A DNA stretch of 54,366 nucleotides from Intoshia linei (taxonomy: Eukaryota; Animalia; Orthonectida): assembly GCA_001642005.1 (NCBI GenBank), contig LWCA01000116.1, positions 1 to 54,366 of the forward strand, read 5' to 3'. The notes under the pieces are model-generated. The model searched no databases. It was not told the DNA's origin and worked only from the letters and a program-made list of their open reading frames with translations. Shown piece after piece: positions 4,790 to 10,000 of the stretch. Made by a program: the position numbers and the translations under genes. Within the stretch, counting starts at the first letter, position 1. Every line of letters starts with the position of its first letter.

Positions 4790-5214
4790 AAAATTTTAAT
4801 CTGAATAAGTGACGCCTTCACTGTCAAAATAAGTACTATATATTATCACATTGAAAATGACAAAATAGGTTTCTACAATTTTTAGGATTGGACTGTTTTT
4901 ACTTTATTTTTAATATTATATACACATTCTGTCGAATAAATTAAAATGTGATGACATTTTTTTTAAATTCTTTACACCAATGTTAACAAAATAAATTTAA
5001 CCTGGAGTAATTATCTTTAAATTAAAAGGTAATGTGATATTACGGGTCCATGTGTAACAAGTTTCGAACCACTTCTTTAAATGATTGATAGTATCGAATA
5101 GTAGCACATTTAGATAAAATTTTCTTATTGAATTTATTTTTTTGGCAGAATAAAATGTCCGCCCTCGGTAGAGCTAGGATGCTGTTTGTACCAAGTACAT
5201 AACAGTCAAACTAG
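4790..5214 (+). mobile_element. Partial Helitron-like repeat copy
   Basis: Ends gccctcggtagagctaggatgctgtttgtaccaagtacataacagtcaaaCTAG|T. Confidence 0.75.
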
Positions 5215-5647
5215 TAAACAATATATTTATTTAATATTCATTTAAAAATGAATCATTTGACTAAATCAATTTAAAAGTTATATTATTCATTTTTTAATTT
5301 CTTCAAGAGGTCAGTGGTTACATCAGTGTATTCCAACTATTTTTGGTTGGCGACACATATTTAAATCTCAAAAAATTTCGCGACACACCAATCAAAAAAA
5401 TAAACTATTGATTAATAAATATAGTTGAATCAATTTTTTTCTAATAATAATCTGAAAATAAGCTATGTAACAATAACAATAATAATACTACCTAACAATA
5501 AATAAAAGTACACATAAGAGATATCACCCAAAAATGTATATAAGAATAAAAAATACCCGAATTAAGATTTTGACTGTAATTTAATCCATTGATTTAGATA
5601 TGTCAATAGTGAAGACATTATACGAAATCGGTAAATAATAATGAGTA

Positions 5648-6916
5648 CTAATTTTTATTTATACAAATGTAAACTATTAAAATTAAAAATGTAATTATTA
5701 TAATATGGACATTAAAATGATATAAAATCAAACTGTTGATTGTTGCTACAAATAAAAATTTGTACGTGTTGGATATCGTTGATTTGACTTTGATTAGTTT
5801 TTTCGTTAAAAGGCCTGTTTTGATTTTTGGAATTTTTTCGGAATAAGTCAAAAAATTTGGCTAAATAAATAATACATTGATATTTAAACGTTTACTAATT
5901 ACCCATCCGCCAGTGTCTTTAATCCATCGTCCAATTTTATGGTGTATATAAAATCCTATAAAATCACCTACATACTTTGATAGTTCTGGGTTGTCATACT
6001 TTTGTGTCATCCATCCTCCAAAAGCGTATATACTGCAAACTCGAGACCAATTTGGAGTACCATCTTGGAAAACCATGTCTATCGTGTTTGCTAAAAATTC
6101 AAACCCATGAGAAGCAGATTCAATCTCAGTGTCAGAAAGAATTTGTACAAAATAGGGTTCGTATAATTGGCAAAACATGTTTACAGATAATTTCATACTT
6201 TTTTCATAAACTCTGGTTTGTTCGTTATCGTCTGCTTCCAAATCCTTCGCGTCGATGGTTCCGTCCATTGTAGCTACCCGGCTCACAATCTTTTGACCAA
6301 TGCGACGGGAAATTGACTCTATGTTTGAAATTTCTCTATCCATTCCCATGATTTCTGCATTTCCGGAACCGACACTTTGTGCACACACACTGCATTCTAT
6401 ACAATATTGACGAACTGATTCATTTTTAATGCCCAATTTTTCAATGCTTTCATTAATTGCACTCATTTGCATTTTTAAATACATTGACTGGCTTTCTGTG
6501 CTACTTAATCTTGCCGTTAATTTATTAATTTCGTTCATTTGATTTTCTAGTTGTCTTTCAATGTGATTTATTTTGTATTGGTAGCATGACGTTTTGTCGA
6601 TATTGTCCATTCCCCATTCTTGTTTAACGCTGACCATGTCAGTTTCAGTCAAAATCTCTGCAACGTAATTGTACTCGGCTTCATATAACGCTTTGATGAA
6701 TTTATCGTACGCTTTTTTGCCTTTTTTCATCAAAATGTCTAAAAAAATTCGGTTCGTTTCTGCATTTTCCATTCTGTTTTTTGCAGAATTTAGTCGATCA
6801 AGTTCGTAAAAATTTAAAACGTTTTCTTGGTACAGTATGTCTTTTATCACAGTTATTTCCAAACACTCGATCAATAATCTGTAATTTGCTTTTATGCGGA
6901 GAAAGGGATTTTCCAT
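5648..6916 (-). CDS. CARD + coiled-coil + Bcl-2-family domain + C-terminal transmembrane anchor (408 aa, 2 exons)
   Basis: Exon 1 6916-5903: N-terminal CARD-like motif FLDILMKKGKKAYDKFIKALYEAEYNYVAEIL; BH1 VFQDGTPNWSRVCSIYAFGG; BH2 WIKDTGGW. A 42-nt phase-0 GT-AG intron (5902-5861) joins in frame to exon 2 5860-5648 (PNFLTY...VHIIIITFLILIVYICINKN*). Confidence 0.88.
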
Positions 6917-7014
6917 TTCATTAAATTTAAAAACTTTATTAACAAAATGTATTGTGTCTATGAATAACCAAATAGTGTATCACAATTTATTTATATATAC
7001 AAAATCTTTAAAAT

Positions 7015-10000
7015 TTATAATTTCCGCAGTTCAAGTATAGTGACCTAAAATTAAGTCTGTATATGGATTTTCAGATATTTACCGATCCGTCGGATGCTGA
7101 TGCGCCAACTTTGTCACCAGTAGAGTTCCAAGATACTTCGAAGAATCCACCAGTTCCTTGGTGAGATGTTATCAAATTTCCATTCTAAATTTATATTGTA
7201 TTGCATTTAGTTTAATTTTGAGTGTATTTATACCTGTACGTCCCAGATGTGGACTTTTTTGTCGAATGAACCACTGGCAAGTTTGGTACCGTCAGGACTA
7301 AATGCGACAGAATAGACAGGTTCGCTGTGTAAAGCTAAACAGTGAACAGACACTCCTTTGTTTACGTCCCAAATTCTGATGGTGGAATCGAATGAAGCAC
7401 TATAAAATTTAATATTTTCTTAAAATACATTTACTACAATTTAAATTACACCCTTCATAGACGGTGTCTTGTAATTGTTAAGTTAAGACACTATCACTGT
7501 ATTCTGTAGCTCAACCCAAAATGTGATTTCGTAGATTGAAATTTCTTTCGCGAAATTATTTACTCAGAAGAGTTTCAAAATGACTTGCGGCCAATGTATA
7601 GTCAAATTTCAACACTACTACTACATCTACTCATGTACGACCATGATTGGTCTATTTTTGATAATTGGTAGTAGAGTGAAACCTCAAATATTATTCGATA
7701 TTCGAACTTTTTAGTATTAATCAAGTTAAATTGTATTTTATATTAATACATTCTAAACTTAAATGACGAGTACGATGAACAGTGGTTTTTAAACATTATT
7801 ATGTAATGTAATTTAAAAAAAGCTGTTTAACCACCGAATTACTATCCGCGGTTTATTAAATAATAGTGATATTTTGAAATCTTAATCTTACGATTCATCA
7901 AATTAAATGTCCAGATTGTTAGAAAGTTAAAAAAATCCAATTTGTAATACTGTTTTTCGAGAATGAGGTTTTTCATAAAGTCCTTCAGGGTCAAAAAAAT
8001 AAAATGAGTCATATAGTTTTAAACAAAATAAAAAAATTTCAATTAACATGATTGTAATTTTTAACCTCTGGCATTTACATGGTAAAACCACAAATTTCCC
8101 TTTTTTTAATTAAAATATTTAAAATCTTTTGAACAAATGGTTCGTTACTAAAAATATCATATTATTGGAAGACGAATTAACGGTTCTCATTTTTTTAAAT
8201 TTTTAAGTTATAGGTTGCCTTATAGGTTGAAAAGCATTTTTTAATATTTAATTAGGTCCATAATTAATAAAAATTTGGAATCGTTTACTCAATGTTCCAT
8301 ACCGGTATATTTAAAAAAAATTGGACGCAGAGAAAAAAGCATTTATATCAATTTAATAACCCCAGAGCAGTGATAGTTTCTGATTCTAGTTTTTATTAAC
8401 ATTTAAATATCTAAATCATCTCAGTTTTATCAGATTTGTATCTGTTTTTATATCGAAGTATCTTTGAAATGTGGATAAATGGTTTATAAGGGTAATAAAT
8501 AAATCCTGTATGAAAAAAAACGTCTATCACGCGTTGTCATGTGTTACCATTTCTAAATATTCACTTCCATCAGCTAGACTTAAAAGGCATTAAAACCGGT
8601 GAAACTCTGATAATGTTTCGGAAACGTAATATAAGTTAATTTATTATAATTATTCAAAGTGAAAAAATGTACATATCGTAAATTGCAAATCGTAATATAA
8701 AGTTTATGGGTTTAAAAGGTTAAATTTATCGAAAATATGTAAAATTTAATTAATTTTATCATCAATAATTAAACAGTAGTCTTAATTAATGGTAAATTCC
8801 TTTTACACCTAGAATAGAGTAAAATCACGAGGGTACAAATCTATTGAGTGAAAGGTAAGCATTTAATTGGAAATCTTGTTGGTCGAACTGTCTTTTTACT
8901 ATTTTTTTTATACCCCATTCTAAAATTTATTTTAAACCACCGTCATATTTTTTCAGTACATCTACTACCATGTTTCTAAATGATGTGAAATTTAATTATG
9001 ATAATTAGTGACACTAAAAATTCCATAAATAAATTTGAATAATTTATTCAATAAACTGCATTTTGGTTGTCCGAGTCAAAGTTATTTACTGTTATTTAAA
9101 TTTTAATTTTTGTTGATTAATTTAATCAGAGACCCTCAGATTTTAGTCCACCCACACATTTGATGACAGATAAATTAAATAAGGTTTTTGTTATCCCGTT
9201 AAATAAGTTTGTACTGTAATAAAAATACCTAGCCAGTCGATGACCAGATGAATCCCATCTAATTGTGTAGACTTCTCTTTCATGAGAAACTAAACAATGA
9301 GTGCATTGGTTCTTCCAAATTCGAACAGTCTTGTCATCAGAACAAGACGCTAACAATTCACCCGAGGGGTTCCATCTTATTGAGTTCACCTCGTTTGAGT
9401 GACCAAGGTGGGTCAATATTGGGGTTTCCTTTCCTAGTTGGCAAACATGGATTTGTTTATCGGTTGAGCAAGATGCAAACGTACAGTTATCTTTCCAATC
9501 AACATCGAGAACGGCGGCTAGAATGTATTTATAAAAATGAAAAGATGAAATGTATATTGTACCAGTATGACAGCTAAATTCCTTCTTGTAAGTGGCAGAG
9601 GCAACGTCCCATATTACTGCAGTCTTAGAAATGTTTGAAAATTCATCTAATAAATAAATACCTTGTCTACACCGGCACTAACAACATAATCTCCAGATTT
9701 ATTCCATTTAAGTGCAAATATAGGTCCGGTATGATGTGTCAATGTTTTTACACATTCGCCTAGAATTTAATTAAAATTAAAAGTATTTCAAAATGTTATT
9801 TAGAAAGTTTATTTTAATATACCATTTAAATCCCATATTCTTGCCAGTCCGTCATATGATCCTGTAGCTAAAAGTGTACCATTTTGCTAATAACACAAAT
9901 TACACATGAAGCCATAAAAACTTACATTCCAATCAAGTGAAGTAACATCTCTACTAGATTCAAGTTGTGCAGTTGCGGAAGGTTGGTGTTTTAAAATTGT

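What the first reader, a model, noticed from the sequence alone, without database searches (positions are those of the whole stretch)
5648..6916. Tail-anchored CARD-Bcl-2 fusion protein: candidate new apoptosis or innate-signalling module
Seen: one uninterrupted 1014-nt exon encodes a CARD-like six-helix domain (aa ~1-92), a heptad coiled coil (~110-165) and a Bcl-2 domain, so the fusion does not depend on a splicing guess. A 42-nt intron then adds a hydrophobic C-terminal anchor. Known: Bcl-2 proteins and CARD adaptors/caspases (Apaf-1/CED-4, caspase-9/CED-3) are normally separate genes; CED-9 holds CED-4 at mitochondria non-covalently, and MAVS is a CARD on a mitochondrial tail anchor. I know of no characterised CARD+Bcl-2+TM protein, but I cannot search. 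Inference: this may hard-wire a caspase or apoptosome docking site onto an organelle-anchored Bcl-2 fold, with the coiled coil as spacer or oligomeriser.
Basis: partly seen in the sequence, partly recalled or inferred. Interest (0 to 1): 0.92.

Follow-up and report, generated by a model that had tools for sequence, protein, structure and literature searches.

The report
Conserved CARD–Bcl-2 fusion protein, Intoshia
The tiny parasitic worm Intoshia linei really does encode one protein that joins a caspase-recruitment (CARD) domain to a Bcl-2 cell-death regulator, but it is a fast-evolving member of an unstudied family also found in the annelid Capitella and about 40 other unnamed sequence clusters, and not a one-off.

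Summary
Observation confirmed. One stop-free 1014-nt exon (window 6916→5903, minus strand) encodes three parts:
- a CARD (Pfam 41 bits; AlphaFold model matches Apaf-1, caspase-9 and MAVS CARDs at Z about 14);
- a 52-residue heptad helix;
- a full Bcl-2 fold (Pfam 48 bits; Z 15–17 to NRZ, Mcl-1, Bcl-xL).

The 42-nt GT..AG intron lies at the family-wide BH2 position. The tail anchor depends on the gene model. The deposited 391-aa protein ("Bcl-2-related protein A1 [Intoshia linei]") splices it out.

The architecture is not unique. About 44 clusters at 50% identity share CARD–linker–Bcl-2, and their Bcl-2 domains form one clade (SH-aLRT 96). The only named member is a Capitella teleta hypothetical protein. 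I found no paper describing the family.

The docking idea is only partly supported. Six-frame searches of the Intoshia genome found no CARD-caspase and no Apaf-1. The other CARDs are a DLG5-like CARD+PDZ protein and a weak CARD-only candidate.

Likeliest function (inferred): a membrane-anchored, pro-survival-type Bcl-2 scaffold whose CARD recruits a CARD partner. Published surveys found no Apaf-1 in annelids, which makes the family worth testing. No RNA data covered the gene.

Verdict: new variant of a known kind; interest 0.6.

The parts
5903..6916 (-). Exon 1: 338 codons encoding CARD, coiled coil and the whole Bcl-2 fold up to the BH2 Trp (GGW)
   Evidence: Stop-free ORF from the first ATG after a stop. 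100% identical to deposited P0001 residues 1-338.
6647..6895 (-). CARD domain (aa 8-90; fold spans aa 1-94)
   Evidence: Pfam PF00619, 41.3 bits. Genome scan gives 44.2 bits at these coordinates. Structure matches at Z 14.3-14.4 to the Apaf-1/caspase-9 complex, Apaf-1 and MAVS CARDs.
6437..6592 (-). Heptad-repeat helix (aa 109-160), candidate coiled coil
   Evidence: One continuous helix in the AlphaFold2 model; pLDDT block means 85-96 for aa 111-160, lower (62) at its first residues. 10 of 15 a/d positions hydrophobic. A linker-region HMM built from the family matches most members.
6374..6421 (-). Conserved short helix after the coiled coil (aa 166-181; family consensus around G-L/I-T/S-E..V..Y/F-L)
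   Evidence: Alignment A1 and predicted helix 166-181. Function unknown.
5903..6337 (-). Bcl-2 fold (aa 194-338): BH4-like helix, loop, BH3 region, BH1, BH2
   Evidence: Sequence search aligns aa 198-338 to human Bcl-2 from its N-terminal (BH4-side) end to BH2, E 9e-10. Pfam PF00452, 47.7 bits. Z 15.8-17.1 to NRZ, Mcl-1 and Bcl-xL.
6041..6052 (-). BH1 core, N-W-S-R here (family and classical consensus N-W-G-R)
   Evidence: W290 is invariant in alignment A1; G291 is present in at least 90% of members but is Ser in Intoshia.
5861..5902 (-). Intron 1: 42 nt, GT..AG, phase 0, directly after the BH2 Trp codon
   Evidence: Sequence. Also used by the deposited model. 39 of 44 family representatives read 'V' after GGW and stop soon after, as expected from an unspliced GT donor at this position. 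Spliced members continue D/N/Q-A/G-F-L/V, compared with P-N-F-L here.
5648..5860 (-).
   Evidence: Translation. Open frame and hydropathy are unlikely by chance. No RNA coverage.
5660..5716 (-). Candidate C-terminal transmembrane anchor (19 residues, mean hydropathy 2.71, followed by N-K-N and the stop)
   Evidence: Spliced homologues P0003, P0017 and P0019 carry hydrophobic C-terminal segments with hydropathy 1.65-2.23.
5648..5765 (-). Alternative: 118-nt second intron of the deposited model, which would delete the anchor
   Evidence: Derived by mapping P0001 onto the DNA. Much longer than the 38-49-nt introns seen nearby.
5581..5647 (-). Alternative exon 3 of the deposited model (22-residue non-hydrophobic tail plus stop)
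   Evidence: pLDDT below 50 for residues 359-391 of the model.

Best explanation
This is a real, intact gene of the orthonectid Intoshia linei. It is a fast-evolving member of a conserved and, as far as I could find, undescribed subfamily of Bcl-2 proteins. The layout is an N-terminal CARD, a helical coiled-coil linker, a complete Bcl-2 fold of the pro-survival type, the ancestral BH2 intron and (probably) a C-terminal tail anchor. Shown: both domains by sequence and by predicted fold, the single-exon fusion, conservation of the layout in about 44 clusters, and one clade for their Bcl-2 domains. Inferred: the tail anchor places the protein on an organelle membrane (mitochondrial outer membrane or ER, as for classical Bcl-2 proteins). 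The Bcl-2 groove senses BH3-bearing partners. The CARD makes a CARD-CARD contact that holds or assembles a CARD partner at that membrane, with the heptad helix as spacer or oligomeriser. In annelids the natural partners would be the CARD-caspases (caspase-2, caspase-Y), which in that lineage lack Apaf-1. In Intoshia, where no CARD-caspase or Apaf-1 was detected, the partner would be the small CARD-only candidate, the DLG5-like protein or the protein itself.
For: Pfam CARD and Bcl-2 both score above their cut-offs in one stop-free exon. The AlphaFold2 model has mean pLDDT 84.3. CARD matches reach Z about 14 and Bcl-2 matches Z 15-17; Foldseek top hits are Bcl-2, Mcl-1 and Bcl-xL. Sequence search aligns aa 198-338 with human Bcl-2 from its N-terminal end to BH2. 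HMMER against 1.84 billion representatives gave 141 hits, and about 30 of them (330-430 aa) align over nearly the whole exon. All 10 top hits, and 25 of 27 aligned members, have CARD plus Bcl-2 by Pfam. Domain HMMs built from the family find 44 representatives with both domains. In the Bcl-2-domain tree, 43 of these 44 fall in one clade with SH-aLRT 96; the 7 short Bcl-2-only rows inside it are likely fragments. One named member is Capitella teleta ELT87488.1. The intron position and the x-x-F-L start of exon 2 are conserved, and spliced homologues end in hydrophobic anchors. The open, hydrophobic reading of exon 2 is rare by chance. This gene is one of only two Bcl-2-domain matches and three CARD matches found in a 41.6-Mb genome. 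Published surveys found no Apaf-1 in annelids or molluscs but did find CARD-caspases there (PMC10959488, PMC11463336).
Against: No experiment or RNA read bears on the gene: read laying returned no contig over 5486-6943. The deposited gene model lacks the anchor. No CARD-caspase or Apaf-1 was detected in Intoshia, so the classical partner is missing here. The CARD-only candidate is weak: 24.4 bits, half the domain. The Intoshia branch is long (1.5 changes per column) and the BH1 Gly is replaced by Ser, so the function may have drifted. The taxonomic range is known only for two named species.
Confidence: 0.55

Rival explanations
1. Self-assembling signalling adaptor in the manner of MAVS. The CARD does not dock a caspase but polymerises with itself, or with the CARD-only protein, on the membrane. 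The Bcl-2 fold and coiled coil control that assembly, and the output is stress or innate signalling and not caspase activation.
For: The CARD model matches the MAVS and RIG-I CARDs as well as it matches Apaf-1 and caspase-9 (Z 14.3 against 14.4). The layout of CARD plus C-terminal anchor resembles MAVS and BinCARD (4fh0, Z 11.4). No CARD-caspase was detected in Intoshia.
Against: CARD folds cannot be assigned to partners from Z-scores. The self-association test of the linker gave no verdict. No downstream signalling components were examined.
Confidence: 0.2
2. Soluble CARD-Bcl-2 protein without an anchor, as in the deposited 391-aa model. The hydrophobic reading of 5648-5765 would then be intron sequence that mimics a membrane helix because A+T-rich DNA encodes Ile, Phe, Leu, Tyr, Asn and Lys.
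For: The deposited model has GT..AG boundaries and an open third exon. The window is 26% G+C.
Against: A 118-nt intron is long compared with the 38-49-nt introns seen nearby. The deposited tail has hydropathy 0.22 and pLDDT below 50. Only 0.38% of open 36-codon windows here are as hydrophobic as the read-through tail. Spliced homologues end in anchors.
Confidence: 0.25
3. Decaying relic. In this very reduced parasite the gene has lost its pathway (no Apaf-1, no CARD-caspase) and persists without its original function.
For: Longest terminal branch among the CARD-Bcl-2 members (1.5) and BH1 G-to-S change. Missing classical partners.
Against: 338 plus 70 codons stay open where stop codons are frequent: only 8.5% of 36-codon windows in this window are open. 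Both domains still score above the Pfam cut-offs and fold with high confidence. The splice sites are intact. Small runs hold 0.69-0.83 of the sampled words of the stretch, and at least one of them contains spliced RNA.
Confidence: 0.05
4. Annotation or assembly artefact that fuses two neighbouring genes.
For: None found.
Against: There is a single uninterrupted frame and the N-terminus aligns from residue 1-8 with homologues. The same layout appears in about 44 independent clusters from ENA, Logan, JGI and NCBI sources.
Confidence: 0.01

Closest known systems
Pro-survival Bcl-2 proteins (Bcl-2, Bcl-xL, Mcl-1, zebrafish NRZ, Trichoplax trBcl-2L2)
   Same: Full helical Bcl-2 fold with a BH4-like first helix, BH1 and BH2. 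Intron directly after the BH2 Trp. Probable C-terminal tail anchor.
   Different: About 190 extra N-terminal residues forming a CARD and a heptad helix. The BH3 region lacks the G-D pair (family consensus T-M-R-x-x-V-x-E). BH1 is N-W-S-R in Intoshia.
CED-9 / CED-4 of C. elegans
   Same: A membrane-anchored Bcl-2 protein physically tied to a CARD-bearing component of caspase activation. The model matches CED-9 (1ohu, Z 11.4) and the CED-4/CED-3 CARD chains (8jol Z 12.6, 2a5y Z 12.5).
   Different: There the link is non-covalent and CED-4 carries an NB-ARC ATPase. Here the CARD is in the same polypeptide, no NB-ARC protein was found in the genome, and no binding has been shown.
MAVS and BinCARD/CARD19 (tail-anchored CARD proteins)
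   Same: N-terminal CARD plus a C-terminal membrane anchor. CARD model matches: 7dni Z 14.3, 4fh0 Z 11.4.
   Different: Neither has a Bcl-2 fold. No sequence relationship beyond the CARD superfamily was tested.
Capitella teleta hypothetical protein CAPTEDRAFT_198866 (ELT87488.1, UniProt R7T3X7)
   Same: Same family and layout: CARD, linker, Bcl-2 and a hydrophobic C-terminus after the BH2 intron. It aligns over Intoshia aa 7-338 at 26% identity, E 4.8e-16.
   Different: Uncharacterised. Capitella has CARD-caspases (a caspase-Y, ELT97848.1, is cited in PMC10959488), whereas none was detected in Intoshia.

Membership tests
Bcl-2 family (multi-motif) | Sequence match to the Bcl-2 profile (PF00452) above the curated cut-off | tested here: met
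   47.7 bits against a cut-off of 31.4, aa 248-338. 49.2 bits in the genome scan.
Bcl-2 family (multi-motif) | Helical Bcl-2 fold around a central hairpin | tested here: met
   AlphaFold2 block pLDDT mostly 84-97 over aa 201-340. Z 15.8-17.1, rmsd 2.0-2.4, 136-146 residues aligned to NRZ, Mcl-1 and Bcl-xL.
Bcl-2 family (multi-motif) | BH1 (NWGR) and BH2 (W..GGW) motifs | tested here: met
   N-W-S-R and W-I-K-D-T-G-G-W are present. W290 and W338 are invariant in the family alignment. The BH1 Gly is Ser here.
Bcl-2 family (multi-motif) | C-terminal tail anchor | tested here: inconclusive
   Present in the read-through model (hydropathy 2.71) and absent from the deposited model (0.22). Homologues have one. 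No RNA data.
Bcl-2 family (multi-motif) | Binding of BH3 helices in the groove; effect on cell death | not testable with these tools
   Needs peptide-binding and cell assays.
CARD (death-fold superfamily) | Sequence match to the CARD profile (PF00619) above the curated cut-off | tested here: met
   41.3 bits against a cut-off of 23.9, aa 8-90.
CARD (death-fold superfamily) | Six-helix death fold | tested here: met
   pLDDT 88-98 over aa 1-100. Z 14.4, rmsd 1.9, 92 aligned to 4rhw_E; Z 14.3, rmsd 1.5 to Apaf-1 1z6t.
CARD (death-fold superfamily) | Homotypic CARD-CARD binding to a partner | not tested
   Candidate partners were only listed. No pair was submitted to complex prediction.
CARD-linker-Bcl-2 subfamily (defined here) | Collinear CARD, helical linker and Bcl-2 in one polypeptide, with Bcl-2 domains forming one clade | tested here: met
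   Full-length alignments. 44 representatives carry both domains. The Intoshia row lies inside the clade with SH-aLRT 96; this is a quick tree and the Intoshia branch is long.
Apoptosome-type platform (Apaf-1/CED-4/Dark) | NB-ARC ATPase next to the CARD | tested here: not met
   No NB-ARC in this protein. The only genomic NB-ARC hit has ORC1/CDC6-type motifs, judged by eye.

The most novel reading that the evidence does not exclude
In the annelid lineage, orthonectids included, published surveys find CARD-caspases but no Apaf-1. There the CARD-Bcl-2 family could be the missing link of the intrinsic death pathway: a membrane-anchored Bcl-2 sensor that directly holds, or on BH3 engagement releases or assembles, CARD-caspases. 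That would be a covalent counterpart of the CED-9/CED-4 arrangement. Intoshia would then show what remains of this module after the CARD-caspases are lost.
Probability: 0.2. Interest if true: 0.85.

Novelty: new variant of a known kind. Interest (0 to 1): 0.6.

Why it matters
How initiator caspases are activated in molluscs and annelids is an open question. Extensive searches found no Apaf-1 there (PMC10959488, PMC11463336). A conserved protein that fuses a CARD to a tail-anchored Bcl-2 fold works like a Rosetta-stone fusion: it predicts a direct physical link between Bcl-2 regulation and CARD signalling, and it can be tested with a few binding and localisation experiments. For Intoshia, the protein is one of only two Bcl-2-domain matches and three CARD matches found in the whole genome, so it is central to whatever death machinery this reduced parasite keeps. 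The practical correction is that the database name "Bcl-2-related protein A1" hides the architecture, and the deposited C-terminus probably lacks the anchor.

Tried and rejected
- RNA support: the look-up of sequencing runs found three small runs holding 0.69-0.83 of the sampled words. Read laying placed no contig on 5486-6943, possibly because of its filter.
- The search for homologous proteins with exon 1 found only the deposited protein. With alignment A1 it found 4 proteins. With P0004 it found 6 family members (the query included) plus ordinary Bcl-2 proteins.
- The listing of cluster members gave one species name, Capitella, among 30 clusters.
- The ESM Atlas gave no usable hit for exon 1 or for P0004.
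- Complex prediction on two copies of aa 100-192 returned "no answer" (score 0.02). This is no evidence either way.
- Paper searches for CARD-Bcl-2 phrasings and for the Capitella accessions returned nothing relevant. The apoptosis-evolution papers I read do not mention the architecture.
- The NB-ARC hit at C2038 has ORC1/CDC6-type AAA+ motifs, read by eye.
- The CARD-only candidate shows no pairwise similarity to this CARD and has no PDB sequence relative.
- No tRNA or Rfam family lies in 4800-7400.
- Exons were searched by reference, and the deposited 391-aa protein P0001 was the first row of the alignment used for folding.

Full report
**What is in the sequence**

The gene lies on the minus strand. 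From the first ATG after an upstream stop (6916), a frame of 338 codons runs without a stop to 5903. Pfam finds two domains above their curated cut-offs in this single exon: CARD (PF00619, aa 8-90, 41.3 bits, cut-off 23.9) and Bcl-2 (PF00452, aa 248-338, 47.7 bits, cut-off 31.4). A sequence search of solved structures aligns aa 198-338 with human Bcl-2 from its N-terminal, BH4-side end to the BH2 G-G-W (E 9e-10). The Bcl-2 part is therefore a complete fold and not a fragment.

Directly after the BH2 Trp codon comes a 42-nt GT..AG intron (5861-5902). The next exon is in phase.

**Fold**

I folded the deposited protein P0001 with an alignment of 131 relatives (A2). The result had mean pLDDT 84.3 and pTM 0.62. 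Block means are 88-98 over the first 100 residues. There is one long helix at 109-160, a short helix at 166-181, and block means of mostly 84-97 over the Bcl-2 part.

A search against 48,161 PDB representatives that does not rely on Foldseek split the model into two clear parts:
- Residues 1-94 match CARDs: the Apaf-1/caspase-9 complex 4rhw_E (Z 14.4, rmsd 1.9, 92 aligned), MAVS in 7dni (Z 14.3), Apaf-1 1z6t (Z 14.3, rmsd 1.5) and the CED-4/CED-3 holoenzyme (Z 12.6).
- Residues 191-348 match Bcl-2 proteins: NRZ (Z 17.1), Mcl-1 (16.9), Trichoplax trBcl-2L2 (16.6) and Bcl-xL (15.8).

Foldseek agrees for the Bcl-2 part. In helix 109-160 one heptad register puts L/I/V/M/F at 10 of 15 a/d positions, against 25% overall, so a coiled coil is plausible.

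**The C-terminus is the uncertain part**

The organism and an existing annotation came out of the first protein search. P0001 is "Bcl-2-related protein A1 [Intoshia linei]", 391 aa, 100% identical over exon 1, with both Pfam domains already recorded. Its model uses the same 42-nt intron. It then removes 5648-5765 as a second, 118-nt intron and ends in a 22-residue non-hydrophobic tail.

- The last 36 codons are open and contain a 19-residue stretch with mean hydropathy 2.71. Of all 36-codon windows in this 26% G+C window, 8.5% are open and only 0.03% are both open and this hydrophobic.
- The deposited tail has hydropathy 0.22 and pLDDT below 50.
- Introns seen nearby are 38-49 nt, not 118.
- The properly spliced homologues P0003, P0017 and P0019 begin their last exon D/N-A/G-F-L, compared with P-N-F-L here, and end in hydrophobic segments with hydropathy 1.65-2.23.

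I put the anchored form at about 0.75. RNA could not settle it. Three small runs hold 0.69-0.83 of the sampled words of the stretch. One of them contains a spliced contig of the neighbouring gene, so it holds RNA. Even so, read laying placed nothing on 5486-6943, possibly because of its filter.

**It is a family, not a singleton**

HMMER against 1.84 billion cluster representatives returned 141 hits. About 30 of them, 330-430 aa long, align over nearly the whole exon (aa about 7-338). All ten best have CARD plus Bcl-2 by Pfam. Of 27 aligned members, 27 have Bcl-2 and 25 have CARD at E ≤ 0.001. Domain HMMs built from the alignment find 44 representatives with both domains, and most of them also match the linker HMM.

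In a quick maximum-likelihood tree of 123 Bcl-2 domains, 43 of these 44 fall in one clade with SH-aLRT 96. Seven short Bcl-2-only rows sit in the same clade and are probably fragments. The Intoshia row lies inside it on a long branch of 1.5.

39 of 44 representatives read 'V' right after G-G-W and stop within a few codons. That is the signature of an unspliced GT donor, so the single-exon fusion and the BH2 intron are conserved across the family.

Only one member carries a species name: Capitella teleta ELT87488.1 / R7T3X7, a hypothetical protein. An annelid relative is what I would expect if, as I recall from the literature, orthonectids are reduced annelids. I did not test that here.

**Literature**

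Phrase searches for CARD-Bcl-2 in several spellings, and for the Capitella accessions, found nothing relevant. None of these papers mentions the architecture:
- the ancestral apoptosis network paper (PMC2246300);
- the amphioxus domain-shuffling paper (PMC2575513);
- the Acropora repertoire paper (PMC4715348);
- the two recent surveys of intrinsic apoptosis across metazoans and lophotrochozoans (PMC10959488, PMC11463336).

The surveys do state that no Apaf-1 could be found in molluscs or annelids despite extensive searches, while CARD-caspases (caspase-2, caspase-Y) are present.

**Possible partners in Intoshia**

Six-frame Pfam searches of the 41.6-Mb assembly gave the following:
- Bcl-2 domains: this gene and one conventional small gene on C718.
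- CARDs: this gene; a single 986-aa open reading frame with CARD plus PDZ domains, which resembles DLG5 by domain content (from memory); and a weak CARD-only reading frame on C1413 with a 42-nt in-frame intron (24.4 bits, half the profile).
- Caspases: about four loci, whose upstream reading frames show no evident long prodomain (read by eye).
- No DED; two weak Death-domain hits.
- NB-ARC: one hit whose sequence shows ORC1/CDC6-type AAA+ motifs when read by eye.

The classical CARD partners, an initiator caspase or Apaf-1, were therefore not detected here. The search works exon by exon on a fast-evolving genome, so a divergent or intron-split CARD could have been missed.

**How it most likely works**

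Shown: the domain content, the fusion, its conservation and the pro-survival-type fold.

Inferred: a tail anchor places the protein on an organelle membrane, the groove binds BH3-type ligands, and the CARD makes a CARD-CARD contact that holds or assembles a partner there. The heptad helix would act as spacer or oligomeriser. In annelids the obvious partners are CARD-caspases. In Intoshia they would be the CARD-only candidate, the DLG5-like protein or the protein itself.

A test of self-association of aa 100-192 gave no verdict and counts neither way.

Rivals, with my odds:
- a MAVS-like self-assembling adaptor (0.2);
- a soluble form as in the deposited model (0.25 for that feature);
- a decaying relic (0.05);
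- a fusion artefact (about 0.01).

**Verdict**

I class it as a new variant of a known kind, a CARD-bearing subfamily of Bcl-2 proteins. Interest is 0.6, mainly because it gives a testable handle on caspase activation in animals without Apaf-1.

As the operators required, I did not build, search or fold the joined 408-aa model. Exons were used by reference, and the deposited P0001 was used for folding.

Noticed in passing
window 5150-5260 (+): A 65-100-nt element with at least 571 candidate copies across the genome; the 40 scored copies are 81-97% identical. Its 5180-5213/5216 part sits in many different RNA-type contigs at very high depth, with different sequences following it. In the genome it is followed by GTAAAC, with GT at 5214-5215. 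It could be a spliced-leader RNA gene family or a SINE/MITE carried in transcripts. Some contigs hold it internally, which argues against a simple leader. No Rfam or tRNA match.
   Followed up: partly
window 6973-7400 (-): The neighbouring WD40-repeat gene on the minus strand has two introns of 38 nt (7043-7080) and 49 nt (7185-7233). A spliced contig in run X3 confirms both, which shows that X3 contains RNA and that introns here are very short.
   Followed up: partly
L016:2333-2707 (+) = G000:C1413:5832-6206: Candidate CARD-only protein: a 124-codon open frame with a 42-nt in-frame GT..AG intron at L016 2519-2560, giving about 110 aa when spliced. Pfam CARD 24.4 bits, covering only the first 55 profile positions. 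It is the only small CARD candidate in the genome.
   Followed up: partly
L014:2446-5403 (-) = G000:C2803: A single 986-aa open reading frame with an N-terminal CARD (27-32 bits) and at least two PDZ domains. It resembles DLG5 by domain content; this comparison is from memory.
   Followed up: partly
L015:3934-4611 (+) = G000:C718: The only other Bcl-2-domain gene found in the genome. It is a conventional small member with a BH1-like D-G-I-N-F-G-R and a BH2 ending G-G-L, split by short introns.
   Followed up: no
window 6041-6052 (-): The BH1 core reads N-W-S-R, whereas at least 90% of family members have N-W-G-R. From memory, this Gly matters for heterodimerisation in human Bcl-2.
   Followed up: no
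L017:4468-4869 (-) = G000:C2038: The only NB-ARC hit in the genome (24.8 bits) shows ORC1/CDC6-type AAA+ motifs (G-N-P-G-T-G-K-T, then F-D-E-I-D, then G-D-I-R-N-A-L-D) when read by eye. No Apaf-1 homologue was detected.
   Followed up: yes
P0001 (deposited protein): The database name "Bcl-2-related protein A1" hides the CARD. The third exon of the deposited model probably replaces a real membrane anchor.
   Followed up: yes
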